64,000 nucleotides of DNA from assembly GCA_964247055.1 (NCBI GenBank), contig OZ176054.1, forward strand, positions 8,370,001 through 8,434,000, given 5' to 3'. Below the pieces are notes generated by a model. That model searched no databases. It was not told the origin of the DNA and saw nothing but the letters and a program-made list of their open reading frames with translations. The stretch comes from Paragordius varius. Lineage: Eukaryota > Animalia > Nematomorpha. Shown one piece after another: positions 40,801 through 63,548 of this stretch. The number at the start of each line of letters is the position of its first letter. Position 1 is the first letter of the stretch. The translations under genes were made by a program, and so were the position numbers.

Positions 40801-43455
40801 TCATATACTATATTGCCAATTGGTCATTAATGTGAATTGGCCAACATAAATGTGCATACTGTGTAAATCCTTAAAAATCTCTGGTTTATAGCGGGTTTTA
40901 TATAATTAAGATCACTTATAAATATAATATAATGGGTTTAATTAATAAAATATTTTTCATTGATTTTATTAAATTTTTGATGCATATATTATATTGCTGT
41001 CAGTCATAATTAACTGGATGTTTACTAATACTTTATAATATGAAATACTTCTAATGGTAAAAATTCAAATTTTTAAGACAAAATATATTCAATGATTAAT
41101 GATTTTTCCGATATTTGATTTTTCTAGATAATTTAAGACTACAACCGTGAAATATATATAGTGTGGTATATCTCTATTCCTTATTTTGCAACCCAAAACA
41201 ATAGTTTATAATAAATAATAAGCAGTTTTAAACCGTCAAACATTGATATAAACGAAAATCAAACTGTTTATGAAAATTAAATTTTACAATGAAAATTCTA
41301 AATGATATGTAAAACCTTTTGTGCTTAGCACTCAACATAACGACATAACTATTACATTTACAATTCAAATTCACCTTTAAACAATACAAATTCAAATTTA
41401 CTGTTAAACAATTCAAATTCACCCTCATATATGTTTTTTAAGATTAAAAAATACCTAAATTTTAAAAAATAAAATTTTGTTTTAAATTAAAATGATACTG
41501 AAAAAATATTAAACTATGCCATAAAGATATATTTTATATTAATAATGAGTTATATTAGTTCGAAAACACATAATTTATTTTTAGGGTGAATTGGTATATT
41601 TGACTTTATATTATAGAGTTGTTTGAATAGTATCTGAAAAAACAATGTATTAGAATTTTATAAAATTAATATTTTTTAATACCAAAGTGATCATTAAATT
41701 TCATTGATAATTTTTTCCAAAATGGTTCTTATGATTTATTTACCATATTTATAGTTTATTACTAATCAATACTTGAATTTTGATGAATTGCTTAAAGTTT
41801 TACCCGAAAACACCTTTCATTCACACCAAAATTCCAAGATTAAAACAGGTTTGAATATACAAATGTAAATTATTTTACAAAATATCGTTTATTCTTATTA
41901 TAGTTAATATTTAACCCTTAAATATTAAGAAATTTTTGACTAATATGAAATTATACATTAGTAAACATTTAATATGATGATAAAATTTGGCTATACAATA
42001 TCGTATGGTGTTACCTTCCAATGATTAACAGTATGACCGGTTAAAATTTTTTGCAAAAATATTTACTCCGTAAATTTTTTTTACAAAATGTAAAAAATAG
42101 CCTTAATTTTTACATTACAATATAATACATAATTTATACAAAAAATTATAAATCAATCCTACAATCCAAAATTGCATTAATATACAAAAACGATATTTTT
42201 TGTATCCATTAATCTACATTAGATCACTCCTTATAATGAGTTATCCTTATAAGGAGTGTCTAATAACTAATTTTATGCTGATATCATACATTTTTCCAAT
42301 TCAACAACGTCTTAATAACATAAAGCCGTTAATCATTCAAAATGAGATTTTTTACATTATTAAATGAAATTTGGTTTAATTCATTTTTATAAAAAAAATT
42401 TAAATAATGATGCGTATAATGAGCCATATTTTTTCCCTTATTCGGGATTATGGATATCTACTGGCTGTTAAATTAGACTTTGAAAAATGACCCATTATCC
42501 AAATACAATTTCTCAAATTATTGCAAATGTGGGCGTGATATAAAAGGATATGTATTTAGCTATTTCCGAGAAATATTTATAAAACACTCACTATTGAGTA
42601 CTTTGATCAGAAGAATAATAATAACATGATACATATACCATTTACAATTCAATTTGACCCTTAAACAATTCAAATTCACCCTCGAACAATTCAAATTCAC
42701 CCTCAAATAAAATATATGTTTTTTAAGATTAAAAATTAACTATATATTATATATTTTTCAAAAATAAAAATTTTTCTTTAAATTAAAATAATACTGAAAA
42801 AATAATAAACTATACCTAAACATATGTTTCTATTAATAATGAGTTATATTAGTTCGAAAACTCATATTATTTTAAGGGTGGATTTGAATTGTTCAAGGTG
42901 GATTTGAATTGTTTGAGGGTGAATTTGAATTGTTCAAGGGTGAATTTGAATTGTTCAAGGGTGAATTTGAATTGTTCAAGGGTGAATTTGAACTGTAAAT
43001 GGTATATATTATGGGGTCGATAGGATAAAACAATATTTATTTCCTTGTCTGAACCAATAAATTCCACTAAAATTTTTACTTATTTTAATGAAAATTATTA
43101 TTTTACAAAAAATATTTCACGGCATTATAAAGTCTTATTTAAAAATATAGATTTAGATGTATGCTAAATAGTATTTATTTTCGCAAAAGTCGTCGAAATT
43201 GACCATAAGCAACACAAACTCCTACAAAATATAACATTTAGTATTTTATTTTTGCATGATTTATTTAGAATCTAATGATACACATATGATTTTATTTTAC
43301 GGTGGATGCACTTATGGAGAAATTGCTACCACACGGTTCCTAGCCAAAAAATTAAGTATAAAATTTTAACCATAATTATTTTAGACAAAACCATTTATAT
43401 TGTAACAACTAGCATATTCAATGGACCATGCTATGTAAAAAATCAAACTAATTAA
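34584..43455 (+). CDS. VPS33B: Sec1/Munc18-family vacuolar sorting protein VPS33 (closer to VPS33B); 5' exons not resolved
   Basis: Hand-assembled GT-AG exons that stay in frame: 34584-34832, 34923-35037, 35392-35546, 35677-35727, 35832-35918, 36009-36096, 38906-38986, 39551-39615, 39701-39799, 40057-40248, 40326-40424, 41755-41848, 43269-43355, 43385-43455. Motifs LQPIDRDLF, IIFDREMDKITP, PNDITYVYNGVYIPIS, FYGGCTYGEI, IVTTSIFNG. N-terminal exons probably lie in 33900-34530. Confidence 0.8.
36167..36196. repeat. (AT)n microsatellite
   Basis: Direct reading. Confidence 0.95.
36893..37588 (-). mobile_element. 5'-truncated RTE-like LINE remnant inside a VPS33 intron
   Basis: One frame with a single stop at 37364-37366: FKYLGDEI...SQLYSTIIRPALTYGTECWPMTK...RLRGAGHIHR...GRPFKSW...NRNNWK. 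These motifs are typical of the post-RT C-terminus of RTE/BovB-like elements. Confidence 0.8.
37838..37875. repeat. (TA)n microsatellite
   Basis: Direct reading. Confidence 0.95.
40475..40861. mobile_element. Tc1/mariner(pogo)-type MITE in a VPS33 intron
   Basis: TA|CAGTATGCACAT ... ATGTGCATACTG|TG, with inner inverted GTTGACCAATT/AATTGGCCAAC. Confidence 0.6.
41353..41597. mobile_element. Internally deleted copy of the 21-bp-repeat foldback MITE
   Basis: Left arm TACATTTACAATTCAAATTCACC plus repeats; right arm reduced to AGGGTGAATTGGTATA; central spacer similar to 42636-43004. Confidence 0.6.
42636..43004. mobile_element. TA-flanked foldback MITE with TIRs built of 21-bp tandem repeats
   Basis: TA|TACCATTTACA ... 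TGTAAATGGTA|TA. Arms are arrays of AACAATTCAAATTCACCCTTG and its reverse complement (about 3 units left, about 6 right). Confidence 0.8.
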
Positions 43456-43514
43456 TATATTCCTGTATATAAAAATTATATTTATATTGTAGTCAAATAA
43501 ATATATAATATTTA

Positions 43515-44666
43515 TTAAATAATGCCAACTGAGCGATATGATTTGTCGATACTGTGATTTCGTTTTATCTGTAAACGTATTTTGGCTGCTTTTTCTTGCC
43601 TAAATAAAAAATGTAAATATATTATAATATTAGAAATAAAAAAATCCCAGCACGTCGAGCAACTATAAGTCGCAAAAAATTTTTTTTGAAAAATAATAAT
43701 ATTTAATGTAAAACTCATATGTGAATTGTTTAGTTTTTTCCAATTATAAACCTATAATTTAGCCTTTTAAAAAAATATTTGTATTATTTTTTCCCTTATA
43801 TATTTATGTTATATATCAAAATAATCAAGAGTATTCAAAAATGAAACGAAAATCTAAACCATAAAATTAAACCATTTCTCCGCAAACCGAGGAAAAAAAT
43901 ATTTTCACGAAACCAAAAATGATTTTATAATCACCAATAAATAGCAACCTTGATTTTATGAGTTCATCCTTTTCCATCTGCTGTTCTAAATCGATTTCAG
44001 GATCCTCTAAACTCCATATTATATTTCGAATTTTAGTAATACATTCGGCTTGATTTAATGCCTGATATCTTGTGCTGTCCGAAGTAACTTGTAAAGACCC
44101 ATCATGAGTAATTTTGTGGGCAAACTAAAATCATTATATAATTTTTTTAAGAAAAATTTAAGTTATAAAGACAAAACGTAAAAACTAAAACAAAGATATT
44201 TATTTAAATACACCCATATTTTTTAATGATTATGCATCCTTATAACCTAATTAAATAAAATTGAGATTGTTACCAACTTACATTTTATTTCTATTTTAGT
44301 AACCAAAAGGATAGGCTATATTTTAAAAAGCATGGTAAGGTTTACAAAAATATCTGAATGTTAATTTAGTTTTAAAATAATTTTAAACACAAATTTTTAG
44401 TCTAATATGGAGTCTACTTTGGTTAATAATTTTTGTTTGTATTCTGATGGAATCCAATCGGCATTTTGTACATTAAATCGTATTTGAACTTTAGTTTTTC
44501 CTAAAATAAATATAAGACCAACTGGCATTAACATTGGATCCGCCGGGCGCACTACTGTTCATATAATTAATATTAAGTTGATCTGAATGTTAAAAAAATA
44601 AAAACTTATCGGAATATATCCATTAAACTTTTGATTAAATGAAGCGTAAAACCGCCGTAAAAGCAT
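43515..44666 (-). CDS. MRPL58: Mitochondrial ribosomal protein mL62 / ICT1 (peptidyl-tRNA hydrolase family) with GGS in place of GGQ
   Basis: Exons 44666-44605, 44582-44523, 44500-44418, 44124-43949, 43599-43515 give MLLRRFYAS...FNGYIPI-NQLNINYMNSSAPGGSNVNARKTKVQIRF...DWIP...KITHDGSLQVTSDSTRYQALNQAECITKIR...RLQIKRNHSIDKSYR. Exon 1 as assembled has one extra base in an A5 run. Confidence 0.8.
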
Positions 44667-44700
44667 GTTGATCAAATTGTTTTCTGAATGAACACCACAA

Positions 44701-47700
44701 ATGGTAAATGTTTTTTAAAGTTTTAGATCCGAAGAAATATTAGGCTTAGAAGAGAATATCTTTACAAGAAATCGATAGAATCCAAAGTAAATGCGATCAA
44801 AGACAAAAAAGATAGATTAAAACGATGTCTTGAAAATAATCATCCACTTGATACTGATTTAAAATCTGAAGCTCTTAATTTAGAAAAATCCATTGAATGG
44901 GAAAACGAAAATAGTCAAGGTAAAAGAGTTAATTAATATATAAGCAAATGATATTGATGATGAATATAGGTTTGCTGGGCTTGAAGCACCAAAAATTATG
45001 ATTACAACATCGCGTAACCCTAGTTCCAAGTTGAAACAATTTACTAAAGTTAACTCAACAGTAATTTTAGGAATTAAAACTTTTATTTCCAAATTCTCAA
45101 CGAATGAACCGTGGACATTACGAAATTAAAATGTTGTTAGAATCATGTAAAGAAAACAAAGTCACTGATTTTATTATAGTGCACGAGCATCGTGGGCAAC
45201 CGGGTAAATCGAATCTATACTAAAACCTTTTTGAATAATGTAGATAATTTTAAAGAGTTTGTTTTCTAAAATATACATTACCTCAATATTTATAATTTTT
45301 TTGTGATAATTTAAACAAATACAGTGTGAGTAAATATAGAATGCTATTCATCAAATATTGCCAGTTATCAAATATAGCGAAGAGATTAATTATTGGTTCT
45401 TAGTATTGAAAAACGAAAAAAATAATTACAAACAATCACTCCTTTGCTGTATATGCTATCTGGCAATGATTAATGAAAAAATAGCAATGTATATACTCAT
45501 ATACTCTATATTACTTTCAACATAAATTGATAGGAAACTTAAAGTATAAAATGTCTATTCTTCTTTTATGTTTGTTAATGCTAAAAATATCTTACCGTCC
45601 TCACAAGTTAATTGCCGGTGTCTTTTGTGAACTTTATAAGTATTCTTTTGCCTCCGACTTTGCTAAATATAAAACCATTTTAATATTACGCGAATCACTT
45701 ATACAATGTTAGGAATAACTTGGAGTGGTAGAAAAAATTTATTTATTACGCTGGTTTGACCAAGAAATAATTAAATAAATAATAAATGACCATTTATTTA
45801 CTCCAAAAATTATGACCTTTTAAAGTTATAATTTTACACGTTTCGTATAAAGAGAAAATATTAAAAATGTTATTTAACATAATTTAATGGTGTATTAAAT
45901 GTGATTTTTAACATAATAATTAATAACACAAATTTTTCTTGTGAAAATTCTTAAATTTTACGATTAATAAAAAGTTTGGTTAGTACCTATGTATAAAAAG
46001 TTTTGAAATAAATTAATATGAAAGTTTTTAAATACTACAAAAAAGTCATTTATTATATTTTGATGTAAAACTGTTTTGATTGATTAATTTTCGGGAAAAC
46101 CATTGTTTTGAAAATAACCAAAAAACGGGCTTCTTAAACTGTTCTGAAACCGTCTTTGAAAACAGAATTTTATTGTTGAAGTTTATATGTTTCTATTTTC
46201 CTGGTAATTATTTAGAGTGTTTCTAAATAAGGCTTGTGTAAATATGAATAATAGAACTGGTTATTTTTTAAAATATTTTCTAAAACCGATGTTTTGTTTA
46301 AAATATGCGGAACTAATACCCAAAAAATGATTTGCAGGCCTATTCCTGACATATATTACCACTGAACCTAATTTAATGACATTTTATAATAGATTGGCAC
46401 AAACACTATATTGTTAAATTCAAATCAGAATATATAATAAATGGTAAGAAGTTAACAAATAATTTGGCTTTAGCTAATTAAACATATATTTTTAGCGGAA
46501 TTTGGAGGTTTAGAACCGGTGTATTAAACATAAATGGTCTCGAGGGCCGCATTTTAGACTCAAATTTGACAAGCTGCATTCGAAAAATATATGGTCATCT
46601 AGAAAAATTTATTAGATAAAATAAAGCTTGCAAAAAATTACGAACATTATAACTGCTATTTATTTGAACACTCCTTCTCTGCCAAATTTTATTTGAGAAA
46701 TATAATTTTTACCAAGATTTTGTCATTTTTTTAATGATAAATTTTTGTATTTGGTATTTTTTAAAAGTTTTCACTGGCTGCTGAAATACTATTGATAACC
46801 ACATGCGGCCGGTGGACGCTATTGGTTTAGATTTTAGAATATAGCAAATGTTACGTTTTTCTGAAATTTACAAAATACTTAAACGCAAATATAATAAAAC
46901 TTTGTAAATGTTAATATAACTTTCTTGTTTGGTGACACATATAGTTAACTTACAAGTTTGTCATTTACCATTTGGACCAACGGCTTTTTTTACGTTGACC
47001 AATGTGGTTACACGCCATGATATACCCCACGATGAGATTGGTGCCATGTCTCAAGCTTATCCGAATCTAATTTTTCACAATTTCACAACGAATTTGGGAA
47101 AACGTGTCACTAAAATATTGCAACACCTATTCCCTGTCCCCAATAGGGATGATAGCAAACGTATAATTACGTTTTACAACCAAAGCGATATTATATCGTT
47201 TAGGTAAAATCATATATGATATATATATATTTATATATACATCTGCTAATTTAGAGTTTTTGTAAATAGGTTTATTATGGTTTTTTTATATACATAGAAA
47301 ATAAAATTAGTTTATTTTACAGTCGCATTATAATAATTTTTATGGGATAAGATTGAAAGAATGATGTTTCTTCACAAATATTTTGTGGTGGTTTCTAACT
47401 CATTATTAAAATTTTCTTATTGAAATTTTTAATTTATGTGCCAAATTTTTGTGTCCATAAAATTAAGTATATTATAAATTTATCATTAAAATTTTTATTT
47501 TGTATACAGACATCACATGTATAAAATGGAAGAGGGACATATCAAACTTACGGAAATCGGGCCAAGATTCGAAATGAAACGTATATTTTTAGATATTTTT
47601 ACATTATTAAACTGAAAAGGTGTTTATAGAAATTTTGTTGTATAATAAATTTATATGTTTCTCAAATAAATAGTATATGAACTAAAGCTGGGAACTCTGG

Positions 47701-47786
47701 ATACATTGGCAATATCCGAATCTGAATGGAGCCTTAAACCTTACATGAATACGGCTAACAAACGTTTTTTCTTAAGCAATGAATAA
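44701..47786 (+). CDS. IMP4: U3 snoRNP protein IMP4 (Brix domain)
   Basis: Exons 44701-44703 (ATG), 44727-44919, 44945-45048, 45071-45203, 46945-47203, 47510-47580, 47674-47786 give [16 protein letters not shown]...DDEYRFAG...ITTSRNPSS...HEHRGQP...HLPFGPTA...EIGPRFEMK...KRFFLSNE*. An alternative ATG|GTAAGG exists at 44332-44334. Confidence 0.9.
46516..46824. mobile_element. hAT-type MITE in an IMP4 intron
   Basis: Degenerate CAGGGGT..CAAC-type ends, GGGCCGCATTTT subterminal motif, and 8-bp TSD GTTTAGAA vs GTTTAGAT. Related to 60319-60649. Confidence 0.6.
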
Positions 47787-48369: not shown

Positions 48370-49865
48370 TTAAACGGTCAAAGACCCACAGCTCTAATTA
48401 TTAATAAACAATATTTTTCATAAATATAAATTATATTACATATGTAATGTATACCTTTTTTGACACGACTTTGGTTAACTTGGTTTTCAGTTTGTTTTTT
48501 GGGATACGTTTTGTAGCAGTCAACTTTTTAACCTTGTATATCCGGGTTAACCAATGTTGCGTAGTGTAAGCCTCCTCCAAATAATGTAAGCTAAAATGTT
48601 TGTTACCAATTTCTGTGTCCCGCGTTCGATCATAACCATAAGGCATACGCGGATCAAACTATACAAATATTAATAGGTTGAAATATTTTTGAAATACTGC
48701 GATATAGACAAGCCCCCTTTTTTAAAAAATAGTAATCGAACTTTTTTGAAATTAATATTTTTTATATAAAATATTTTGTAAATATATTTATTTTAATGTT
48801 TGGTTAGCTCAATACCCATTGGCTTTAAATTTAAAATTATCACTTACATTATACAAATTCGAAAATATTAGTATTATCTAATCAATTTTATTTTAAAAAG
48901 GCTTATTATGAGGAAAACCTACTGTAAAATAATATAGTGTAATATAACATACTTTTAACTTCCCAAAATCGTAATAGGATAATTTGTACATGAGGCAATT
49001 AAGGAGGGTTGGAGAACCTTCATGATCAACGCGAAATTCCCCGTTTTGCGTAAAATAATCTTGTTCCTAAACAATATTTTACAAAAAAATAAAAAAATGG
49101 ATAAAAATATATGATTAATATTACAAATAATAATTTTAATATTTTATAAAAATTACATTATAAAATAAACTTATTCTATATCAGTATTTCCAATTTAAAT
49201 AAAGAATTATTACAAAAACATAGGTTTTCAAACAAATAAATTTAAAATATTTGATCAAATGAAAAAAAAAACATTACTCGTATTTCATTTGGATGTTCCC
49301 CTTCAGCAATTCGTACCATCCATAAAAATTTGTTAATATCATCGCCGGAGAAACCAATAACTCCCCCAAAAATAACCAAGACATAATCAACGCCTAATTC
49401 CTGCATAATTTTATATGCGGCCGTTTCGTTTGAGGACATAGCTTTACCAACCTAGGATTCGCGACAATAAAGATAAAAATGAATAAAAATATTCACCAAA
49501 TATTTTTATCATAGCTTAAATCTATAAGTTTATTGGCTATCATATGATTATGGTTCAAAGTTTTTTTATTTGTTTTGAAAGATACGTGTTTTTACACTTT
49601 CAATTTTATGTTCAATTCAAAGGAAACTATAAGAGCATGGATGAAAAATCAAAAAAACGAACAATAAACATCATTTTTTGAGATAATCTTATAGATTTAT
49701 GATATTACATTTAACCTACATTATTACAATTTATAGAATGAAGTTTGTTAAACATTTCACATTTCATGTTTATTCAAACAATGGGTTCTGTTGAATAACG
49801 AATGACAAAAAAATCTTTTGATATTTATAATCTATCTTTAAGTAATTGCTTAATTGTTTGAAATC

Positions 49866-49898
<33 letters not shown>

Positions 49899-52800
49899 TA
49901 AGATTATTACTAAAGCTATATGACTATTGTTCCAAGTATTATTATCCACTAAAGTTGTTCTGTTAGCCATACCTGCTATTTGATACCTGTTTATTTATAT
50001 TGGATTAATATAAATTTTTTGAATATCTTTTTCATATAAAGAGTAAATTATGTAAAAAATATATATTTTATAGTTAAACAAAAATCAAATACCCATAATC
50101 CCACCAAGACATCACAGTCGCATCTTCAGGCGTATTTTGTCTAAGCCAATAATATGCTTCACGGAAATCATCAATAATAAATCGATTGCTAAATTTTGTA
50201 GAATAGATAGAAGATATACCATTTACAGTTCAAATTCACCCTTGAACAATTCAAATTCACCCTCGAACAATTCAAAATCACCCTTAAACAATTCAAATTC
50301 ACCTTTGAACAATTCAAATTCACCCTAAAAATAGATTATCGAACTAATATAACTCATTATTAATATGTAATATATGTTTATGTTATAGTTTATTATTTTT
50401 TCAGTATTATTTTAATTTAAAACAAAATTTTTATTTTTTAAAAATATATAAAAATATTGGTAATTTTTAATCTTAAAAAACATATATTATATTTGAGGGT
50501 GAATTTGAATTGTTCGAGGGTGAATTTGAATTGTTCAAGGGTGAATTTGAATTGTTCAAGGGTGAATTTGAATTGTTTAAGGGCGAAATTGAATTGTAAA
50601 TGGTATATTAGTCATGCTTAATACATAAACTAACCCTAATATAATGACTTTCTATAAAACCTTTAAGTCATACATCCACTTTTTCAAATTTTTATGTCTG
50701 GAAACCCATAAAGTTTATCATAATTAATCATTTATATCTAAGCATAACATTTTGGAATAATGAAAACAAGGAATAAAATAAATGGATTTATCGTTTTGAT
50801 AATATTTTATCAGAATTTTAACAAAAAGGAGAAGTGGGAGCTAAACATATCTCTCTTAACATTTATAAAAAATATAAAACTAAAAACATTTCTATATTTT
50901 TTGTAAAAATTTAGTATTCAAACCCTTCTCCATCATAGGACGATAAAACAACGGATGGACTTGAATAAGCGTTAGATGTGACCCATGTGCAATGTACAGC
51001 AAACATAAGCAACAATAATATGCATACTAAAACTGTTACTCCTAAAAATATGAGTTTTTTATGGATATATAGTTTCTTTAAACATTTCCTCTGAGAAATC
51101 CTAATATATTTCATTTATCTTTAGGTGATGCATAATATAAAATTTTAGATATCTTTATAATTTACCATTTTCAATATTTAATGTTAAAAAAATTATTAAA
51201 TATAAAGTTTTGTTAAAAAGCACAAAAAATGAAGACTTTATACATAAATTAGATTTTATATGTTTAATACAAATTGTACATAATTAAAGTAATAGGTAAA
51301 CCTTTTAGGCTTGATCCTACACCAGTTTCTTCTTTGGTCGTTGATTGGGTAAAAGATGGGGAATATTTGGAAGTCAGTTTACCAGCCTTAAGATTGGGAT
51401 CAATAAAATTGATTAAAAATTTAAATGAAAATAAAAACAGAACATAATTTGTGTTCTTAAACAGAAATATACAACACAAAGGGCTTCGCAGGCATAGAAA
51501 ATTTTAGCCTTTAAAATACATTTTAATAAAAAAAATTATTTGGAATTCGAAATTTTTTGTTATTTTACATTCGCTGTAGAATACTTTTACAGGACGCACA
51601 AAAGATCTTGAAAAGCTGCTTGTTGGGCACCCTTTCTGTAACTAAAAAAAAATTGCAAAAAAACCTTATCATACAAGGCACGTTTCTCCTTTGTGGCACC
51701 GTATTGAGGTGCCAATGTTTCTTTCATACTGTCATTCAATGTGGCTAAAATGTCACCCGCATTTCCCTCATCATCGTCCTCTTCTAACGTTAAAATGTCC
51801 TTTGATAATCGATGTTTACCCTTTGAAAAAAACAATTTAATGTTTAAATATTCATAAAAAAGTTATATTTACGCGTTTATTTTTATTAAAAACTAAATAA
51901 AACTCACTTTTTCGACCACTGATTCAGAAGACTACAAGGATATGATATATAAAATTGATGTGACAAAATACAAGAAATGACTTCTTATAGAAAAAGTATA
52001 CAAAAGTGTATCAGGTAAAAATTAAGGGATAAATATCAATAATGATGCTACCAACCTTTGCATATATACCATTTGCAGTTAAATCCCTAAACGCTTCAAA
52101 ATGGTCCTTGAACATTACAAGTTGGTCCTTAAACTTATAGAGTTTGGATTTAACCATAAATTTTGCATGTATTTATTAGTTTCTGACCTAATTTTCTTGA
52201 TTTATTATATATATTATTTCAAATTAATATTTTTCATCTAAGAAAACAATTTTTAGTTTCGAACCATTTTTTTCCAATTCAATAATATGATTAAACTATA
52301 AATGTTTTTAACGAAAAATTGTAATTAATAACCTAAAAAACTTATATATTTTTTTCAATTACATGTTAAAATCTTATTAACAATATTTCTTAACAACTTA
52401 AAAAAGATATATGGTTTTTGAATGATCACAAGTTGATTTTGATTTAATAGTTGGGTTGAATCAATAGAACAAATTAAAAATAATAAAATATATTAATGGT
52501 ACACGGTTTGATTGATAAAAGTCAAACGCAATTTAAAAAATTTTAAGGACCAACTTGGGTTCAAGAACACTCTTAGTGCAAATGGTATATTACCAATAAA
52601 TACCAAAATGTCGACTGAAAATTTTAATCACATTTTTGCAATGATTATGAGTTTTACATGCAATCATCCAATATTTGCATCTAAAATGATGCAATAAAAT
52701 TAATTGATTAATTCCGATTTAATTAAACAAATTTTTGTAGATTTGACTTTTAATTAAAAAAAGATGTGATTACGTCTTCAGATTCATCATCGTTTTTGAG

Positions 52801-55800
52801 GTAGGATTCAAATAGGGTTGAAAAAGCTATACTGGCAAGAACACATATAACAGGCGTAAGGGTTAACATAAGACGTACCATTACACCAGCAAAGTATACG
52901 GCACTCATTGCAAAGAGAATGACTAAAAAAGATGAATTATTAAACTATATTTTTTTTATTTTATAAAATCCCTCAAATGTCGGATTTATTCCAGATAAAT
53001 ATTTAGATTTTAATCCCATAAAAGTAAAAATAGTATATGTTATACAAAAAAACTTAATATCGAAAAATAAATTATACAAAATCGTTCCAATGCCAATTTA
53101 AATGTCTCAGTAATTAATAACAATAAATTGTTTATGTTTAATATAGTTAATTAATAGTAAACAATAAACTTACGTATTTTTTAAATTTCAAAAACAACAC
53201 TCAGTAATTCTCCAATTTTTTATGGCATTAGATATTATATAACCTCAACTTAAGTGTATTGCTTCACAAATCTTACTGTTTGTTCGTTAAATAACCTCAG
53301 ATTAGTTTTTTATAATTTTAAATAGCCATTACTATATGTTAGCTAATCTTACTGAAAACACGCGTTTCATTCAGCTTTCCAAAAACGAACCAAAGACCAG
53401 CGGGAAACATGCAAAGCAGGACATGATTATCAAAGAAAAATGAACACCAAGTTGTGGGTTGATGTTCAGAAACACTTACTATGATAGGGATATGGATTTT
53501 AGCGTAACCCGTATCCCACAAGCTATAAAATCGTCCACTCCAGGGTGCAATATAACCTATTTATATAAACCAAAACAGGTAAAAAGTTAAAAATGTAATG
53601 CGTAATTTAGAGATAGTCTCTTTTCAAAAAAATATGTGGCATACTTTTTGTTTTAAGTTAAATATATTTCAAAAGCCATATTTTATACATAACATACTGA
53701 AATTTCAATATATTTAAAATTGGGTATAAAACGGTTACAACACCAACTCCATATACTCTTAAAACCTACCTTAAAAACAGATATTTAGTTTACAAAAAAT
53801 ACTACTATTTTATTATTATTATTACGCCTCACTATTCAAATTTATTAACAATTAATAAAAACTAAATTAAAGTACGCGAGAGGTAAAGAATGATGAAGGA
53901 TTTCAGCAAAATATATATATTTATACAGTTTTTAGTCTATTATATAAATATTACCAAAAATTATATGAAAAAACAATATAATAAATAAGTATTTATTTTT
54001 TTTAAAAAAATATTCAATCCTTTTATATGTATAAATTACCCAAATAGGTAAGAAGGACAACACTGGCAAATACTGCGACTGCGCCCACAATGATTGATGC
54101 AATAAATAGGCGTTTAAATATTTGTTTGGGTATGAAATCACGCAAAAATCTCACAAAGTTATATAAGTGCAATAGGGCAAACACGCCTAATAATAAAATC
54201 AAAGTAATTAAATAATATATATATTTGATTAATAATATAGAAAAATTAAGGTTCCATAATTTCTGTAAAAAATCATATATTTAACCTTGATTTTATTAAA
54301 ATAATCTATTTTTTTAAGTTTTTGCAACCATGATAGAATATAGAGCTAAAATAAGATTTAAAAAAATTGGAGTTTTTCATAAGTTTTTCTATAAATTTAA
54401 ATTATTACTAAAATTAAAACAAACCTGCGGCCGCCATGTGTTCGCTTGTTCTTAGGGGTTGAAACCCAACAAAAGGGATTTCCATTGAAAGAATGAGTCC
54501 AACAATGTAAAAAGTAGTGTAACCTAAAAAATAATTAAAAATAAATAGTATTCGCATGGTTATTAAAAAATCGCTATGTTGTATAGCTAAAATGGCATAT
54601 CGTTTTTGTAAAAACCGATAAAATGGTTATAGATTGTTTTACTTCAAAAAAATCAATTTAGACAGAATTTATCGTATGTAAACTAGAAACGTTACAGCAT
54701 AATAATTAACATCTAAATATATCTATATTCAATTAAAACTTAAATTTTCAAAACTTAACTTAAATAATAATTTTATGTTAAAAAAACATAAATTTAAAAC
54801 ATATTACTTACTTATATATAATTTTTGACTAAATCTTCCCATGATTAGGAGAACAAAAACGTGGAGAGGTATGAGATTTATAATGTACACGTAACCACCC
54901 CAAGCTGAAACCTGTACAAATATTAAATACAGAATCCGTTGATATAAGAAATAATAATACAAGATCTAATACTGTTTAAAGGAAAAAAATATTCGTGAAA
55001 TATTGTAACTCAAACACAATTTTAATATAAACACGTTTTTTCCCATTATAATTTTCCAAAAAAGTCACTTAAAAAGATAAATGTAATCAGAGATTTTTAA
55101 CAATTTATAATGAGGGTATGATAATATTTCAAAATTTGGATATTTTGCGTATCAAAAATAATTTATTACCATGTAAAAATATGAAATTGCAGTCAAACAT
55201 GACCAGTATATAGTTCCAGTTTTGACGGACTTTATCTAAATAGCAAAAATACACTAAAATATTAGACCAAATTTTGTAATTTCAATATATATTAAGTTGA
55301 ACAAAAACGATGAAATTATAATAATTATATTAAAAACAAAATTTACCCAAAGATAATATGTAAACATTAAGGCAAAAATAGCGATTCCCTCGTTGTCATA
55401 GCTACCTGCGACTGATCGGCTTATATAACCGGGAACTAAATGCGAAAATTATATTAAATAAATAATATTAGAAAAATGATAGATAAAAACAAAATCAAAC
55501 CGATCGATATGAAACAAGCGGCAAATAGACCAGCTCCCGTATTCCATAGTTCCTTGGTTAATAAATAGGTAGCTATCGCCGTGAGTCCGCTAAATAAATG
55601 TAAAAAGGTTTTTGAGTTATTATATTCGGAAAAAACAATCTTAGATGTTAATATATCCATAAAAATCGTTTAATATGTGACTAAATAATTACCTAAACAC
55701 AGGAGCTAAAAAGACGCATATATCTTGTATATGAACTGGAATATGTAAAAGATGCAATATATAATGAATCGTTCCGGATGTTATCATTAAACCAGGATAA

Positions 55801-56125
55801 ACCTATTTATTATTTTAATATTATGTAATACAGTGCCTCCAACAATTCTACCAAGCGGATTCCAGGCTCTTTCATCAAACCAGTTTAAAAAATTGTAAAA
55901 ACCGTTTTTAACCATGTAATGAGTTGCGCGATAATTAAACCTATAATATGATAAAAAATAGTACCATGGATCAAATTCGTGAATTATGCTTTCGTAACGG
56001 ATTACGGCAAAGAGTCTTGAACTAAATCCCAAAACCCAAGCAAGAATTAGAACTACACAAGGTATGATGCTCAACCATGCTTGTGGTTTTGAAACAACGC
56101 TTCTAATCGTAGTCGTACTTGACAT
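48370..56125 (-). CDS. STT3B: Oligosaccharyltransferase catalytic subunit STT3B
   Basis: Multi-exon. [20 protein letters not shown]|[66 protein letters not shown]-type residues (SKPxxW, DERAW, IVGG, LYDK-AGK). Last exon either 48393-48370 or read-through to the stop at 48431. Confidence 0.92.
50217..50605. mobile_element. TA-flanked 21-bp-repeat foldback MITE in an STT3B intron
   Basis: TA|TACCATTTACAG ... TGTAAATGGTA|TA with about 5 and 4 repeat units per arm. Lies about 27 nt from the STT3B acceptor at 50189-50190. Confidence 0.8.
52067..52587. mobile_element. Diverged relative of the foldback MITE in an STT3B intron
   Basis: TA|TACCATTTGCA ... TGCAAATGGTA|TA, with inverted TTTAAGGACCAACTTG segments. 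Confidence 0.6.
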
Positions 56126-57009
56126 TTATGCGTAGTGGTCCGACTAAAAAAACACTTTATTTAATGAATGGAGCAATCTGCCACGCTAGTTTTATCAATA
56201 CATCAATACACCAAGTTTTTTAAATATGAATTTTTGTAACAATGGCTTATATAACTTATTATAAATATTAAAACTATTTTTTATTTAGGAGTTCAAATTA
56301 TTTGTGATTTCTTTAGGGAATTAAATATAGCATATAATACATAATATTAATTTAATATTCACGCGTTTTTATTGTAGTTTCAGACTCTAAAATAAAGATA
56401 GCCATCAAATCCTATTAAATATCTGATCAGCATAAAAGTTAACGAATATTTTCTGTCGATTTTGATCTCTTAATTTTTGTGTCCCAGTTGTATTGGGTAG
56501 TTTTATATCCCATATTTGAGTTGATGTTTGTTTCACTAACTAAAATCACACCAAAATAGTTAAGGAGTCAAAGAAAAAAATATCAATAAATATCAGTATA
56601 TTATGTGTAAATATAATTTAATAATAAAAATTTAGTTGTACGTGCTATATTTTTAGATTTTTTTAGTTGATCTTAAAATTTAACATATATTTAAAAATTT
56701 TGTCGGCTAATCGTGCATTTTTTTATATTAAGAGTACTGCTCATGAAAAGCAATAATATTTGGGATTTTTGAAGTCCACATCTAAAAATTAGTTTTATAA
56801 AATATCATTTGCTTTTTATTTGTGATATGTTTTAGTGATTATTTTTCTAAAGAAGCCTCTAGCTTTCACCAAAAAAATTTAATTAAAAAAATATGCGCAA
56901 CCATAATAATCCTGATACATTTTCTTATCAGAATAATATTTCATCAGGTTAAACTTGAAACCCCATGATTTCGGACGCCGTGTTATATTTTTTTATTTAG
57001 GTTTTTTAA

Positions 57010-58700: not shown

Positions 58701-59959
58701 AAAACTAAAACCTAGCTAAAAATATTGATGGAGTGTCACATATTACTTAGTATTTTCAGTTTAAATTTTATATTAATGTTATTTTCGGTTCAATCGATAA
58801 CACTGGACAACAAATTTTTCTGCCACTCGATATTTTGCATTTCTGATTTTTAGTATCATTTAAACAGTAAATCTGAAATAATAATAACAACTTGTTGGAA
58901 GAATTTTGTATAATTTGATTTCTTTGATTATGCGCCCTCTTTATCAAAATTTTACTAAAAAAATGTTTTTCTTTCAAAATATACAAGTAATGCCCATTCG
59001 TAATATATCATTCGAAAGAGTAATAAAAACTCTATAAAATGCATACTAATATGTATTACATCGACAGTTAATATTGGACACAAAGAGCGACAAACGCGCG
59101 AAGCGACATTTTTTTAATTATTATATTTTAAAAACTAATGGGTGAAAATAGCTTAAACTTTGTTTAGATGGTGAATGTCCAAAAAAGATAACACAAGAAA
59201 GTTTTTTTGATTAAAACATTTTTTTATTGCTTTTATGTCACTCAAAACAGCCATTTTTATGTTTTTTGTTTTTTAAAAAGTACTATCTCATCAATATTAA
59301 TTTATTTTCTTTAGGCTGATAATTTCGAAATTTTAAAGATAAAAACCAAATTTAAGGTATTTTTGATCTTTTATAGCCATTATGTAATAAATTTACAGTA
59401 ACTATGCATTTTTGTATCCACTAGGTAAAATATTTATGATAATAATAATTTTTATTAAAAAAGCAAACAGGAAGCTTTTTCAAACATTTTTTTTAAATTA
59501 AATACTAATATAACCCTAATAATTATAAAATAATTTATATGATTTTCAAATTAGTTTGTCTATGAAAATTCTTGAATTATTTAAGGATTGAAAATTTCGA
59601 CCATTTAAATCCAAAAATTTTTACATCCGATTGATTTAAATGTCTTACTACCATTTAAAAGATGCAGTTTTTTGCGCTCTTTCGAATGATATAAAATACA
59701 TGGCTTCATAACATCAAACTTTTAATTATCGAAATTACGAGTTTAATGTTAAATCGGGGCCAAAAATTATCGATACATTCTAATATAAAAAAATTCTTGA
59801 ATGCTAGACCAATTTTCTTTTCAGATATACTAATTATGTACTTTAATGAAATAAATTTTAAATTTACAAGAATGGCAGTTAAAAAAAGTTTAAATTTGTT
59901 GTCTAGTGTAATACAAATCAGTAATAGTTAAATCAAATTTATCTGCTTCTGCTAGAGCT

Positions 59960-60207
59960 TAAAGGCGTGGCTGGAGGAATGGGGGCGTGGCATCAGGCAC
60001 CATAGTTGAAAGGGTGCGGATTTTAAAAAATTTTAATTTTATTTCAAAAATGTGAATTAAAAAAACGATCAGTTCTTAATTATAATAAATGGGTGGTCAT
60101 GACCACGGTTTGAATTTAATTTTTTTCAAAAATTACAAGGGGTGGCGTGGAGGGGGCGCCATCACGGATTAATGCACCGGGCGCCAGAAATGAAAATTAC
60201 GCCTCAG
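59960..60207. mobile_element. Diverged relative of the 19343-19522 MITE (reverse orientation)
   Basis: AAAGGCGTGGCTGGAGG...GGCACCATAGTTGAAGGG matches the reverse complement of 19343-19522; right end ATTACGCCTCAG. Confidence 0.55.
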
Positions 60208-60318
60208 TGAAGGCTAACAAGTCCAAAACTAGTATACGATAACTATTGGATCATATAAAATCTGCGTTTTATAAAAAACATCTGTTTGTTTTTAATTTAA
60301 AAATATCATAGTTTAATA

Positions 60319-60649
60319 CGGGATTCAACACAATTGGTTTTGCGGCCGCATTTTTAGCTCGAAAAATCCGACGGGCCCCATTCGCAAAATATATGGACAT
60401 TAATAAATATTGTATTAGATTTTAAACATAAAACTGAAAAATCTAACACGATATAACTACCATTTATTTTATAACAGTTCCTGCTAACTCATTCCCAAAA
60501 TTCGGAAAGAGTTATTCAGAAATCAATTTTATTTAGATTTTGTAACGAAAAATATTTTATAAAAATATTTCATATATTTCGCAAACAAATTTGTCGCGGG
60601 CTGCAGAAATATTTCGGAGAGTATGCGGCTTGCGTGTTAAATACCCCTG
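60319..60649. mobile_element. hAT-type MITE (331 bp)
   Basis: CGGGATTCAACAC / GTGTTAAATACCCCTG ends; 8-bp TSD GTTTAATA vs GTTTAATG. Confidence 0.7.
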
Positions 60650-61187
60650 GTTTAATGTATTATTATCATATATGTATATTTTAGTATTTTTTTATGTTTA
60701 ACTTATGTTGGTTACGTGATTAATTACCCTTCATTTACTTAGAATTCGTAAAATACATAAAGCCACATATATCTTAGTATGACAATTTATAAGTTCAAAA
60801 TGGGCTAAAAAACAAAATTCATAGTTAAATATTTAAGTTAATTTTGGTATTTTTTGTAAATAGCCAAAAAACATATAATATTTTACAAAATTAATCGATA
60901 GATAATTTGCTATCGACGATAACTCTGAATATTAACGCCTCTTACGTCGCACAATGTAATATACTATTAGTGTTGCACAAGCGATATAAGTTCATTTTTA
61001 AAAATTATTTTAAACTAACAAGTAAAAATATTTAGAAAAATAATGATTGAATGGCAAAAATAGTAAATCAACAAAAAAATGTGGTAATTTGATAATAATA
61101 ATCAACATATGAGCATAAATAAATTTATTTCGTTTTTCCATAATTAGCAGTGATAATATTAATAATAATTATATGATAAAGGTATTA

Positions 61188-63548
61188 TCATTTGTCATCA
61201 AAACGTTTGATTATGGGTTGAGTATGCATTAAATTTTCCGAAAACGCCAATATTTTTTCTTTGCCCCTAACTTCATTATCCATAAGTGGCAGTTTTGTTA
61301 TGTAAAAACCATCGTATAGATCTTCAATCTATGAAATCAAAATTTTAAATATGGAAATAAAAATGGTTCATAATAATTGGAATTCACAAATTTTTTGGCG
61401 GAAAACGCCATCTTTAAAAAATTGTTTGATTAGTAATATTTTCAAAAATAAATCAAAATATCATGTACCTAAAAATTATGAATCAAAAATTGAATACAGA
61501 AAAACAAATTGGTTTTTGGTTAGAACACAATTTTATTTGTAAAAATGTATAATAAATCTATAAAAAAGTTATTCTCTAGAAAATTATTTACAAAAATTAC
61601 ACCATAATAGTTAATGGATTCAAAAAAAATAATGACAAGAAATATAAGTATATATGTATGTAAAAACATAATTTAAAAATTAACATTTTCTTTTATGAGC
61701 AAAAAAATTCTCTTTATATTTAAAAATCCACTAAAATTTTAACATTTTTAAAATAGTAGATTATATCTATACATTACCTGATCAAGATATTTTTTCTGAA
61801 GCTTAAGCCGTGGTTTACATAGCGTACAAGCCTCATTATTATCATCCGGTAATAAAAGTTGATTTACAATTATGTTGTGAGAATCTATGTGGCATTTAGC
61901 CAATTCCTGAATCAATCTTTCTGTTTCGTAAATCGAAAGGAATTCGGCTATGCAAACACAAACAAATGTAGTTTGTTCCTATGAAATCAAGTTTTAATAC
62001 ATATTAATAAGTAAATAATTTAATATATTTTTGTAAAGAAAAAGATATTTTTGATCCTTATTTTTTTTAAAATAGTTACAATAGCAAAATATATAATTAA
62101 GTGTAATATTAACATATTTATCCCTTATTTCGCCACCCAAACGACAAAGTATGTTAAAAAATAAGTTCCCGTCTAAAAAATATTTGTTCAACCTTTTGCC
62201 AATAAAATTTTGATTTTACTGTAATTCATACATTGTTAAAGAGTACAAACTGAAATATGGGTTATGGATTGTTGGTTTTCAAACCTTATTTAAACAAATA
62301 AATTTTACAAATAGAGTAAAATAATTACCGGATTTTTGAATTGGCTATTAACGAATTTGATTGTGTCTAAAGTTGATTCGAGTTTGGATGCCATTGAATT
62401 GACATTTAAATCACGCTCACCAATCAGACCAGCTATCTAAATATACATTATGACTTATGAGAAGAGATATTGCAATTTTTGTTTAAATTGTATCCAATTT
62501 TTAACGTTTTAAGTATAAATGCCAATATGTATTTGCTATTTAATTATTTACATAATAATAAAATACTTATCAATAAAATATTGAATTTAATTTAACTTAA
62601 CCAAACTGTTAAAAACTAATTTACTTATTCCGGTTATAAAAAAATCGATGAAAGAAATTTTCTAAAACCTGAATGTCTTGCATATATTAAAACTAAGAAC
62701 CATTTACTAAAAATAATCGTTGCAATCCTTTAATAATCTTGGTTTTTATGAACTAAATTGGGACCTGATATGTTCATTAAAAATTTTATATTTTTAAAAA
62801 CTCGTCCTACATTCGGATTATATAACAAAAATGTATACATAAAATTTTGGCAAAAGAAAATTTTTTTTCATCGCAATACATTTAGCGAAAATATATTTGA
62901 TAAAAAAATAAGGGGAATTAGGAATAGATTACCTGAGACACAAAACCCCCAAGACTAGATTTGAGTTGCAATAATTTACCCAACCCTTTTTCAATCACGG
63001 TTGGAAAGAAAAGAAGTCTGAGCGTATGACCAGTAGGTGCTGTGTCAAAAACAACGACAGAAAAATCCATACCCTTTACTAATCTGAATATTAAATTGAA
63101 AAAAAAACTTCATAACTTCTGCATAACTCATGGCTTCGTCTATACCAGGAAAAGCTCCTACTAATTCCTTAATTACAGATTTTCCCATAGACCAACTATC
63201 TAAGATTTAGTTAATATTAAACCATTGTCGGAGAAGTAATCATCAGGCAATTCGTTAATTCCTAAGTTCGGATCTATTTCCTGAATTTTACAAGACTAAT
63301 ACCATAGCAAATAAATTATCAAATCCATTGACCTTTGTTGGAACTTTAGAAAATTTTTGATCAAAGGCATCTGATATATTATGGGCAGGATCGGTAGATA
63401 TAATCAAAACATTTTCTCTAACTTTAGCTAGTTGAACAGCTAAACTGCAACTACAAGTAGTTTTGCCAACACCACCCTTTCCACCCACAAAAATCCACCT
63501 TAATGATTTTTGCTCAATAATATTTTTGCAGGTCGTCAGATCTCCCAT
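61188..63548 (-). CDS. ASNA1: ATPase GET3/ASNA1 (TRC40), tail-anchored protein insertion
   Basis: [71 protein letters not shown] (CXXC), IEDLY..KLPL...EVRG. Introns 63281-63302, 63200-63222 and 63084-63108 plus three longer ones; stop TGA at 61188-61190. Confidence 0.92.

What the first reader, a model, noticed from the sequence alone, without database searches (positions are those of the whole stretch)
43356..63302. Pervasive 22-29-nt spliceosomal micro-introns coexisting with kilobase introns
Seen: GT-AG introns needed to restore conserved reading frames: VPS33 43356-43384 (29 nt); MRPL58 44501-44522 and 44583-44604 (22, 22); IMP4 44704-44726, 44920-44944, 45049-45070 (23, 25, 22); STT3B 55803-55831, 55941-55964 (29, 24); ASNA1 63084-63108, 63200-63222, 63281-63302 (25, 23, 22). 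The same genes carry introns of 1741 nt (IMP4) and 2809 nt (VPS33) full of TEs. Most micro-introns lack a recognisable branch point or pyrimidine tract, and only one of eleven is a multiple of 3. Established: most animals have a minimal intron size well above 30 nt; comparably tiny introns are known mainly from ciliates, nucleomorphs, microsporidia and dicyemids, and ciliates deplete stop-free 3n introns. Inference: a modified spliceosome with a bimodal intron-definition regime in a repeat-rich animal genome; standard gene predictors would mis-annotate these genes.
Basis: partly seen in the sequence, partly recalled or inferred. Interest (0 to 1): 0.78.

Follow-up and report, generated by a model that had tools for sequence, protein, structure and literature searches.

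The report
Tiny 22-29-base introns, mostly front-loaded
Five ordinary housekeeping genes of this AT-rich animal genome (earlier scan notes call it a horsehair-worm relative) can only be read if eleven segments of 22-29 bases are cut out as introns. That is about the shortest size known in animals. The layout, tiny introns bunched at gene fronts with long repeat-filled introns behind, is already published for flatworms.

Summary
All eleven micro-introns are GT..AG in gene orientation, and removing them restores frames that run collinear with homologues. One coordinate is off by one base: ICT1 is 44583-44605, 23 nt.

A splice-aware aligner I wrote recovered the three ASNA1/GET3 introns exactly with five of six full-length homologues. 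Two of them sit at the same codon and phase as 70-1490-nt introns in a fish and two other animal contigs.

The size distribution has three classes, not two: about 22-31 nt, about 46-111 nt, and 0.2-3 kb.
- In four window genes, ten micro-introns are the first introns and all start within 440 nt of the ATG (chance about 3.5e-6). VPS33's is its last intron.
- Genome-wide, about a third of inferred introns in Ras-family genes are 19-31 nt. Almost none are that short in chaperonin gene bodies.

I found no sign of a modified spliceosome. U1, U2, U4, U5 and U6 are canonical, and SF1, SF3B1 and a U2AF65-like gene are present.

Micro-introns have weaker 5' sites and an A-rich patch at -9 to -7 followed by a short T run. 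Depletion of lengths divisible by three is not established.

This scan reported the same phenomenon on more than ten other pieces of this genome. The closest published analogue is trematode microintrons. No RNA could be examined.

The parts
63281..63302 (-). ASNA1/GET3 intron 1, 22 nt, phase 0
   Evidence: Recovered by my spliced aligner with 5 of 6 homologues. Same codon and phase as introns of 529 nt (fish L009), 1490 nt (L010) and 70 nt (L033).
63200..63222 (-). ASNA1/GET3 intron 2, 23 nt, phase 1
   Evidence: Spliced aligner. It is the only frame-restoring solution at this site. No intron at this position in the three other animals compared.
63084..63108 (-). ASNA1/GET3 intron 3, 25 nt, phase 2
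   Evidence: Spliced aligner. Pfam positions 117 to 120 across it. Same codon and phase as introns of 242 nt (fish L009) and 76 nt (L033), and about 198 nt in L010 at the looser setting only.
61329..62932 (-). ASNA1/GET3 introns 4-6: 62437-62932 (496 nt), 61979-62328 (350 nt), 61329-61777 (449 nt), with the exons between them
   Evidence: Spliced aligner. Positions 203/0 and 239/0 (codon/phase in P0020 numbering) are shared with fish and L033; 305/0 is shared with L033.
44704..44726 (+). IMP4 intron 1, 23 nt, directly after the ATG (44701-44703)
   Evidence: Exon 2 aligns to human IMP4 from residue 2, has no Met, and is preceded by an in-frame stop.
44920..44944 (+). IMP4 intron 2, 25 nt
   Evidence: Flanking exons align to human IMP4 residues 2-62 and 70-102. 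Read-through stops after 5 codons.
45049..45070 (+). IMP4 intron 3, 22 nt
   Evidence: Human IMP4 residue 102 to 103 exactly across it. Single solution.
45204..46944 (+). IMP4 intron 4, 1741 nt, carrying dispersed repeats
   Evidence: Spliced aligner with P0154, P0156 and P0160. Segments at about 115-310 and 1301-1585 of the intron have at least 40 copies on many contigs at 70-85% identity.
47204..47673 (+). IMP4 introns 5 and 6: 47204-47509 (306 nt) and 47581-47673 (93 nt)
   Evidence: Spliced aligner with P0152 and P0160.
44583..44605 (-).
   Evidence: Only this GT..AG closes the frame. The downstream exon aligns to mouse ICT1 from residue 20/21.
44501..44522 (-). ICT1/mL62 intron 2, 22 nt
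   Evidence: Mouse ICT1 coordinates 39/40 to 41 across it.
44125..44417 (-). ICT1 intron 3, 293 nt. A probable fourth intron lies at 43600-43948 (349 nt).
   Evidence: Single frame-consistent GT-AG solution. Mouse ICT1 residue 67 to 68 across it.
55941..55964 (-). STT3B intron 1, 24 nt. The only 3n micro-intron, and it has no in-frame stop.
   Evidence: Pfam STT3 positions 34 to 36 across it. The eight in-frame codons have no counterpart in the profile.
55803..55831 (-). STT3B intron 2, 29 nt
   Evidence: Pfam STT3 positions 73 to 74 across it. Read-through stops after 14 codons.
48659..55692 (-). STT3B introns 3-16: about 103, 65, 111, 258, 288, 238, 483, 430, ~1683, 735, 106, 459, 211 and 294 nt
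   Evidence: Frame-consistent GT-AG enumeration between Pfam-anchored exons. Lengths above 100 nt are approximate where several solutions exist. Introns 13 (106 nt) and 14 (459 nt) were picked by eye. One search found no solution for the first and only a 348-nt one for the second. The ~1683-nt interval may hide a small exon.
43356..43384 (+). VPS33 last intron, 29 nt (probable)
   Evidence: Single frame-restoring solution. The upstream exon matches Sec1 profile positions 532-553 of 575 and only Vps33 chains in the PDB. The downstream 22-residue exon has no hit of its own.
40425..43268 (+). VPS33 gap of about 2.8 kb before the penultimate exon, holding 21-nt tandem/foldback repeats
   Evidence: Repeat family shared with the STT3B 735-nt intron. 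No in-frame single GT-AG intron was found.

Best explanation
These are ordinary U2-type GT-AG spliceosomal introns, several at ancient conserved positions, that have shrunk to about 22-29 nt in this lineage. They are the genome's minimal-intron class.

The class is concentrated in roughly the first 450 nt after the start codon and occurs in adjacent clusters. Short genes can carry them throughout, and they occasionally occur near the 3' end. Introns further downstream are about 50-110 nt or have been inflated to 0.2-3 kb by interspersed repeats.

Inferred mechanism: they are removed by intron definition by a standard spliceosome. The 3' module is compressed, with candidate branch adenosines about 7-9 nt upstream of the 3' splice site, a T run of about 4 nt, and YAG. 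Base-pairing of the 5' site with U1 is relaxed. Retention of 10 of the 11 shifts the frame and hits a stop within 1-26 codons, so mis-spliced mRNAs would be exposed to nonsense-mediated decay.

Shown here: the termini, frame restoration, collinearity with homologues, position and phase conservation, positional bias, and presence of the splicing machinery. Inferred: actual excision from RNA, branch-site use, intron definition, and the reason for the 5' bias.
For: - GT..AG termini at 11 of 11 sites after one 1-nt correction.
- Homologue or profile coordinates are contiguous across 10 of 11 sites.
- Unconstrained spliced alignment recovers the three GET3 introns exactly.
- GET3 introns 1 and 3 share codon and phase with introns of 70-1490 nt in a cyprinid fish (L009), L010 and L033.
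- Only 1-3 frame-restoring solutions per site, all 49 nt or shorter.
- Intron series from 5' to 3':
  - GET3: 22, 23, 25, 496, 350, 449
  - IMP4: 23, 25, 22, 1741, 306, 93
  - ICT1: 23, 22, 293, (349)
  - STT3B: 24, 29, 103, 65, 111 ... up to ~1683
- The chance that the micro-introns occupy the first ranks in all four genes is about 3.5e-6 (method, counting the probable fourth ICT1 intron).
- The pattern occurs elsewhere in the genome. A 29-nt intron lies near the start of a chaperonin gene on contig C1. Eleven of 33 inferred Ras-family introns are 19-31 nt, in six genes on three contigs.
- Machinery: canonical U1, U2, U4, U5 and U6, plus SF1, SF3B1 and a U2AF65-like gene.
- Sequence features:
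  - A at positions -9 to -7 in 22 of 33 micro-intron cells against 17 of 57 in larger introns (P = 0.0009).
  - GTAA at the 5' site in 2 of 11 against 13 of 19 (P = 0.02).
  - AT content 82% against 65% in flanking exons.
Against: - No RNA evidence of any kind was available.
- The VPS33 intron rests on frame logic plus a weak one-sided match.
- GET3 intron 2 has no counterpart in the three animals compared.
- The motif statistics rest on 11 introns.
- One micro-intron (STT3B, 24 nt) is 3n and stop-free, so it could in principle be a coding insertion. Against that, the profile skips it exactly.
- Two micro-introns lie far from the gene start, so the 5' rule is a bias and not a law. These are the VPS33 last intron and an estimated 31-nt intron downstream of a 1.4-kb intron in a Ras-family gene.
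Confidence: 0.85

Rival explanations
1. One reading: the lineage has a modified spliceosome with a dedicated second regime for micro-introns, for example altered U2/SF3b/U2AF, or U1-independent, cap- or promoter-coupled recognition.
For: - At 22-25 nt, U1 and U2 snRNPs cannot sit on the intron together as they do in textbook E/A complexes (established structural knowledge; this step is inference).
- Micro-introns have weaker GTAA 5' sites than larger introns in the same genes.
- They are strongly biased to the first ~440 nt after the ATG.
Against: - All five major snRNAs are full-length with high scores, and the U2 branch-site recognition box is unchanged.
- SF1, SF3B1 and a U2AF65-like gene are present.
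- Dicyemids, ciliates and flatworms splice comparably small introns without any reported special machinery (PMC6543705, PMC5014332, PMC6530080).
- Micro-introns also occur far from the gene start (VPS33).
- Protein-level changes were not examined.
Confidence: 0.12
2. The segments are spliced, but the real junctions differ. Either a nearby alternative GT-AG pair is used, or larger introns skip the small exons.
For: Six of the eleven sites have one or two alternative frame-preserving GT-AG pairs of 16-49 nt.
Against: The alternatives delete or add residues at conserved positions, and homologue coordinates are contiguous only with the stated junctions. Every alternative is itself a micro-intron, so the phenomenon would stand.
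Confidence: 0.05
3. The segments are not introns. They could be assembly indels, pseudogene frameshifts, programmed frameshifting, or DNA-level excised elements like ciliate internal eliminated sequences.
For: No RNA was examined. One segment is 3n and stop-free.
Against: - Eleven of eleven are bounded by GT..AG, fall in a narrow size band, and are AT-rich (82%) against 65% in exons.
- Two coincide in codon and phase with introns of a fish and other animals.
- The same pattern appears in six Ras-family genes on three contigs and in many other windows of this scan.
- The exons are otherwise intact and highly conserved.
Confidence: 0.03

Closest known systems
Flatworm 'microintrons' (Opisthorchis felineus and other trematodes, cestodes, Macrostomum; Ershov et al. 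2019, PMC6530080)
   Same: - A discrete class of very short introns coexists with a ~90-nt class and a kilobase class.
- Microintrons sit next to each other in clusters and prefer the 5' end of genes.
- The polypyrimidine tract is reduced.
- Gene finders with default minimum intron length miss them.
- Intron definition is proposed as the mechanism.
   Different: - The peak here is about 22-25 nt, against 37 nt in O. felineus.
- This lineage appears to be ecdysozoan, not flatworm. That rests on earlier notes and I did not verify it.
- Here micro-introns have weaker 5' splice sites than long introns. In O. felineus they are closer to consensus.
Dicyemid mesozoan intron miniaturisation (Ogino 2010; Zverkov 2019, PMC6543705)
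   Same: GT-AG introns of about 20-30 nt in an animal, at conserved positions. The median is 27 bp.
   Different: In Dicyema about two thirds of all introns are under 30 bp and the genome is compact. Here the micro class is a minority: 11 of at least 40 introns in the window genes, and about none inside chaperonin gene bodies. It coexists with repeat-filled kilobase introns.
Ciliate ultra-short introns (Paramecium ~25 nt; PMC5014332)
   Same: Similar absolute size. Frame-shifting or stop-containing introns make retention detectable by nonsense-mediated decay.
   Different: In Paramecium all introns are tiny, and 3n introns are clearly depleted and stop-rich. Here 3n depletion is not demonstrated, and the one 3n intron has no stop.
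Nematode short introns with a UUUUCAG 3' site and no branch consensus (C. elegans; cited from my own knowledge)
   Same: AT-rich short introns, a T-run plus YAG 3' site, and no strong branch-point consensus.
   Different: The C. elegans minimal class peaks near 47 nt. This genome also has a U6atac gene, which C. elegans lacks as far as I recall.

Membership tests
U2-type GT-AG spliceosomal intron | GT at the 5' end and AG at the 3' end in gene orientation | tested here: met
   11 of 11 after shifting one boundary by 1 nt.
U2-type GT-AG spliceosomal intron | Removal restores a reading frame collinear with homologues | tested here: met
   Contiguous profile or homologue coordinates across 10 of 11 sites. 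VPS33 is supported on one side only.
U2-type GT-AG spliceosomal intron | Position and phase shared with introns of orthologues | tested here: met
   GET3 introns 1 and 3 match introns in fish L009, L010 and L033, and introns 4-5 also match. Not tested for the other four genes because no homologue loci were available.
U2-type GT-AG spliceosomal intron | Excised from RNA (cDNA junctions, lariats) | not testable with these tools
   No transcript data for this genome were reachable.
U2-type GT-AG spliceosomal intron | Branch point and pyrimidine tract upstream of the 3' splice site | tested here: inconclusive
   A enrichment at -9 to -7 (P = 0.0009 against larger introns) and a T run at -6 to -3, but only 11 introns and no consensus motif.
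U2-type GT-AG spliceosomal intron | Major spliceosome present in the genome | tested here: met
   U1, U2, U4, U5 and U6 are full-length and above cut-off. SF1, SF3B1 and a U2AF65-like gene are present.
Flatworm-type microintron architecture (PMC6530080) | Separate very short peak plus ~90-nt and kilobase classes | tested here: met
   Window genes: 22-29, then 65-111, then 211-1741 nt. Ras family estimates: 19-31, then 46-86, then 251-3214 nt. The samples are small.
Flatworm-type microintron architecture (PMC6530080) | Microintrons adjacent to each other and biased to the 5' end | tested here: met
   The first 2-3 introns in four genes. All ten start within 440 nt of the ATG. Chance about 3.5e-6. 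Exceptions are the VPS33 last intron and one Ras-family case.
Flatworm-type microintron architecture (PMC6530080) | Microintron splice sites closer to consensus than those of long introns | tested here: not met
   GTAA at 2 of 11 micro-introns against 13 of 19 larger introns.
Dicyemid-type global intron miniaturisation | Most introns under 30 nt | tested here: not met
   11 of at least 40 introns in the window genes. About 45 inferred chaperonin introns are nearly all 200-1500 nt. 11 of 33 in the Ras family.
Ciliate-type tiny introns under NMD surveillance | Depletion of 3n introns, and in-frame stops in those that remain | tested here: inconclusive
   1 of 11 is 3n (P = 0.075), and it has no stop. 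Lengths quoted in earlier notes add four 3n introns among six (not checked by me). The Ras table cannot see stop-free 3n introns.
U12-type (minor) intron | AT-AC, or GT-AG with a rigid 5' site and branch consensus | tested here: not met
   The 5' sites are GT followed by variable A/T bases. A U6atac gene exists, but that does not bear on these introns.

The most novel reading that the evidence does not exclude
This lineage splices the shortest introns known in any animal (mode 22-25 nt, below dicyemids). It does so mainly in a zone about 450 nt from the gene start, at sites with poor U1 complementarity. That would point to a promoter- or cap-proximal, largely U1-independent mode of intron recognition. 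It would have evolved independently of the similar 5'-clustered microintrons of flatworms, making the pair a natural system for asking what sets minimal intron length.
Probability: 0.2. Interest if true: 0.75.

Novelty: new member of a known kind. Interest (0 to 1): 0.6.

Why it matters
If RNA data confirm them, these are among the shortest spliceosomal introns in Metazoa, in a lineage where I found no published mention of intron size. Two hairworm genome papers do not contain the word 'intron'.

They show that the flatworm layout has arisen at least twice: micro-introns clustered at gene fronts with repeat-inflated introns behind. That makes the cause of the 5' bias and the physical lower limit of intron length testable by comparison.

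In practice, any annotation of this genome made with a default minimum intron length will truncate or frameshift the 5' ends of many genes. That could inflate apparent gene loss in this group.

Tried and rejected
1. Genome-sample scans for GT..AG segments bridging two open frames of at least 40 codons, run on the window plus 200 kb from contigs C1 and C2. They showed no excess over control dinucleotide pairs. The exons between micro-introns are too short, and long repeat ORFs swamp the signal. I dropped this approach in favour of profile-coordinate tables.

2. Identifying the organism myself.
   - A word search with the receptor-like ORF 6152-7393 found nothing.
   - IMP4 and GET3 exon searches gave no obviously close relative.
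   - Run accessions of the AT-rich contigs L031/L032 could not be traced in the literature.
   - Only L009 could be named: a Sinocyclocheilus cavefish, by assembly accession.
   - The 'hairworm / Gordionus relative' label therefore rests on earlier notes. It is consistent with base composition: the window is about 24-36% GC, and Gordionus is 26.9%.

3. Fetching more DNA from the window's genome.

4. Pfam on eight ORFs inside or next to long introns found no transposon domains.

5. The schistosome and tapeworm genome papers are not held in the library.

I redid the step from coordinates.

Exons were searched one by one by reference. Joins were made only inside local scripts, over windows of about 17 residues, to count frame-restoring solutions.

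Full report
**What is there.** The window is G000 contig C5, 8,370,001-8,434,000, from a 110.6-Mb assembly in 44 contigs with about 24-36% GC across the window. In gene orientation, ten of the eleven claimed segments start GT and end AG at exactly the stated coordinates. The ICT1/MRPL58 segment 44583-44604 starts TT. Only 44583-44605 (23 nt) is GT..AG and closes the frame. The corrected lengths are 29, 23, 22, 23, 25, 22, 24, 29, 22, 23 and 25 nt. One (STT3B, 24 nt) is a multiple of three, and it has no in-frame stop.

**Are they needed?** I searched every exon separately by reference.
- **ASNA1/GET3.** The exons hit ArsA_ATPase profile positions 1-65, 91-117, 120-168 and later 205-275. The 19-residue exon 2 fills the 66-90 gap.
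- **STT3B.** Profile positions run 4-34, 36-73, 74-103 and onward. The eight in-frame codons of the 24-nt segment have no counterpart in the profile.
- **IMP4.** Exons 2, 3 and 4 align to human IMP4 residues 2-62, 70-102 and 103-146. Exon 2 has no methionine and is preceded by a stop, so the ATG at 44701 must be joined to it across the 23-nt intron.
- **ICT1.** Three consecutive pieces align to mouse ICT1 at 20-40, 41/42-64 and 68-109. Each E-value is marginal, but ICT1/mL62 chains fill all top ranks in each of the three searches, and the coordinates are contiguous.
- **VPS33.** The upstream exon matches the end of the Sec1 profile and only Vps33 chains. The final 22-residue exon gave no hit, so this intron is probable rather than shown.

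Around each site there are only one to three GT-AG pairs that restore the frame without a stop, and all are 49 nt or shorter. Unspliced read-through hits a stop within 1-26 codons at ten sites.

**Independent recovery and conserved positions.** I wrote a protein-to-genome aligner that allows GT-AG introns only, with a minimum of 15 nt and any position. I ran it with six full-length GET3 homologues found by searching exon 1. Five of the six recovered exactly 63281-63302, 63200-63222 and 63084-63108, followed by introns of 496, 350 and 449 nt.

The same aligner was run on GET3 loci from other animals: L009, a Sinocyclocheilus cavefish identified by its assembly accession; L010; and L033. It places introns at the same codon and phase as this gene's introns 1 and 3 to 5, and in L033 also intron 6. 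Micro-intron 1 corresponds to introns of 529, 1490 and 70 nt. Micro-intron 3 corresponds to introns of 242 and 76 nt, and about 198 nt in L010 at the looser setting only. Intron 2 is private to this genome. So at least two of the micro-introns are old introns that have become tiny. This also argues against assembly error, frameshifting or DNA-level excision.

**The whole intron spectrum.** From 5' to 3' the series are:

| Gene | Intron lengths (nt), 5' to 3' |
|---|---|
| GET3 | 22, 23, 25, 496, 350, 449 |
| IMP4 | 23, 25, 22, 1741, 306, 93 |
| ICT1 | 23, 22, 293, probably 349 |
| STT3B | 24, 29, 103, 65, 111, 258, 288, 238, 483, 430, ~1683, 735, 106, 459, 211, 294 |

Two STT3B values (106 and 459) I picked by eye where one search's enumeration failed. 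All ten micro-introns in these four genes start within 440 nt of the ATG. No intron starting further downstream is under 65 nt. If sizes were placed at random, the micro-introns would take the first ranks in all four genes with probability about 3.5e-6. VPS33 is the exception, because its 29-nt intron is the last one. There is also a clear intermediate class (65-111 nt), so the distribution has three classes and not two.

**Beyond the window.** I therefore used match tables, in which a gene appears exon by exon with profile coordinates.
- In nine chaperonin (Cpn60_TCP1) genes, about 45 inferred introns are almost all 200-1500 nt. In the one such gene inside my sample, a 29-nt GT..AG segment (L018:2519-2547) lies just before profile position 14, upstream of where the table can see.
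- In Ras-family genes, 33 cleanly inferred introns fall into three groups: 19-31 nt (11, in six genes on three contigs), 46-86 nt (8) and 251-3214 nt (14). These lengths are estimates, good to a few bases. Stop-free 3n introns are invisible to this method.

So the micro class is common genome-wide but is not the majority. It is tied mainly to the front of genes, and short genes can carry it throughout.

**Long introns and repeats.**
- The 1741-nt IMP4 intron is confirmed. It contains two dispersed repeat segments, one with at least 40 copies at 70-85% identity.
- The VPS33 gap and the 735-nt STT3B intron share a foldback element built on 21-nt tandem units.
- ORFs I tested there have no Pfam transposon domain.
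- I could not reproduce a single in-frame 2809-nt VPS33 intron. A small exon may lie inside the ~2.8-kb gap.

**Sequence features.** Micro-introns are 82% AT, against 65% for the neighbouring exons. Their 5' sites are GT followed by variable A/T bases. GTAA occurs in 2 of 11, against 13 of 19 larger introns from the same genes (P = 0.02). At the 3' end they show A at positions -9 to -7 in 22 of 33 cells, against 17 of 57 in larger introns (P = 0.0009). This is followed by a T run at -6 to -3 and YAG. With eleven introns this is suggestive only. It fits a compressed module of branch site, short T tract and 3' site, and not an absence of signals.

**Machinery.** U1 (124 bits), U2 (178 bits, branch-site box unchanged), U4 (107), U5 (91) and U6 (114) are full-length. 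SF1, SF3B1 and collinear exons of a U2AF65-like gene are present. U6atac is present and U12 was not found, but that search scored only 42 of about 10,000 candidates. Nothing here points to a remodelled spliceosome. Protein-level differences were not examined.

**3n question.** One of eleven gives P = 0.075. The intron lengths quoted in two earlier notes on other pieces (24, 27, 23 and 24, 23, 21, not checked by me) would make it 5 of 17, which is no depletion.

**Comparison with what is known.**
- **Dicyemids.** Median 27 bp, with two thirds of all introns under 30 bp (PMC6543705). That global miniaturisation is not met here.
- **Paramecium.** Introns are uniformly about 25 nt with strong 3n depletion (PMC5014332). 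That is also not met here.
- **Flatworms.** This is the closest published system. In Opisthorchis felineus, intron lengths peak at 37, 90 and about 3000 bp. Microintrons lie next to each other, prefer the 5' end and often lack a pyrimidine tract, and the authors suggest intron definition (PMC6530080). The present genome shows the same architecture with the first peak near 22-25 nt. It has weaker rather than stronger 5' sites, apparently in a different phylum.

**Organism.** My own attempts to name it failed. Earlier notes of this scan name Gordionus (a horsehair worm) as the closest relative and report 40-50-nt introns at orthologous sites there. The base composition agrees with the published Gordionus value of 26.9%. 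An AT-rich Logan contig (L031) carries a GET3 gene with a 48-nt intron. Two hairworm genome papers in the library never use the word 'intron'.

**Verdict.** The 'modified spliceosome' inference is not supported. The architecture is a new instance, and the shortest so far among animals, of a known kind. This scan has already reported the same phenomenon on more than ten other pieces of this genome.
- the conserved-position test against a vertebrate;
- the rank and distance statistics;
- the three-class spectrum;
- the family-wide estimates;
- the snRNA and splicing-factor inventory;
- the link to flatworm microintrons.

Noticed in passing
window 44536-44544 (- strand): The ICT1/mL62 exon reads GGS where mouse and human ICT1 have the GGQ release-factor motif. 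This is visible in the alignment and was also flagged by another note (s1-248967).
   Followed up: partly
window 44664-44703: The ICT1 (- strand, ATG at 44666-44664) and IMP4 (+ strand, ATG at 44701-44703) start codons are head to head, only about 35 nt apart. Their 5' UTRs must overlap, be extremely short, or be supplied in some other way.
   Followed up: no
window 43452-43600: VPS33 (+) and ICT1 (-) end tail to tail. The stop codons are about 66 nt apart if the probable last ICT1 exon (ending near 43518) is right, so their 3' UTRs probably overlap.
   Followed up: no
window 42644-43049 and 50211-50650: A foldback element built on 21-nt tandem units occurs in the VPS33 gap and in the 735-nt STT3B intron. 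Its arms are 86-94% complementary.
   Followed up: partly
window 45318-45513 (inside IMP4 intron 4): A dispersed repeat of about 190 nt has at least 40 copies on many contigs at 70-85% identity. Several loci match on both strands, which suggests a palindromic MITE-like unit.
   Followed up: partly
G000:C2:4857045-4857187: A U6atac gene scores 66 bits against a cut-off of 33, while U12 was not detected. A minor spliceosome is probably present. The U12 search was filter-limited.
   Followed up: no
G000:C3:257-528 kb, C2:11.95-11.99 Mb, C6:565-633 kb: U2 genes (46 matches) and U1 genes (17 matches) lie in clusters with many degenerate copies.
   Followed up: no
window 27110-28651 (+): A 513-residue single-exon ORF carries a helix-loop-helix domain.
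   Followed up: no
window 6149-7393 (-): A 414-residue ORF from the receptor-like cluster has no Pfam hit and no word-search relative at E <= 0.001.
   Followed up: partly
L031:1592-1639 and L033:345-413: Public automated gene calls (P0232, P0240) translate straight through in-frame 48- and 69-nt introns of GET3 in other genomes. This is a concrete example of how short introns corrupt protein databases.
   Followed up: partly
G000:C2:9616675-9617196: A Ras-family match spans 522 nt for 159 profile positions and has three stops inside. This is compatible with 3n micro-introns read through in frame. The DNA could not be fetched.
   Followed up: no
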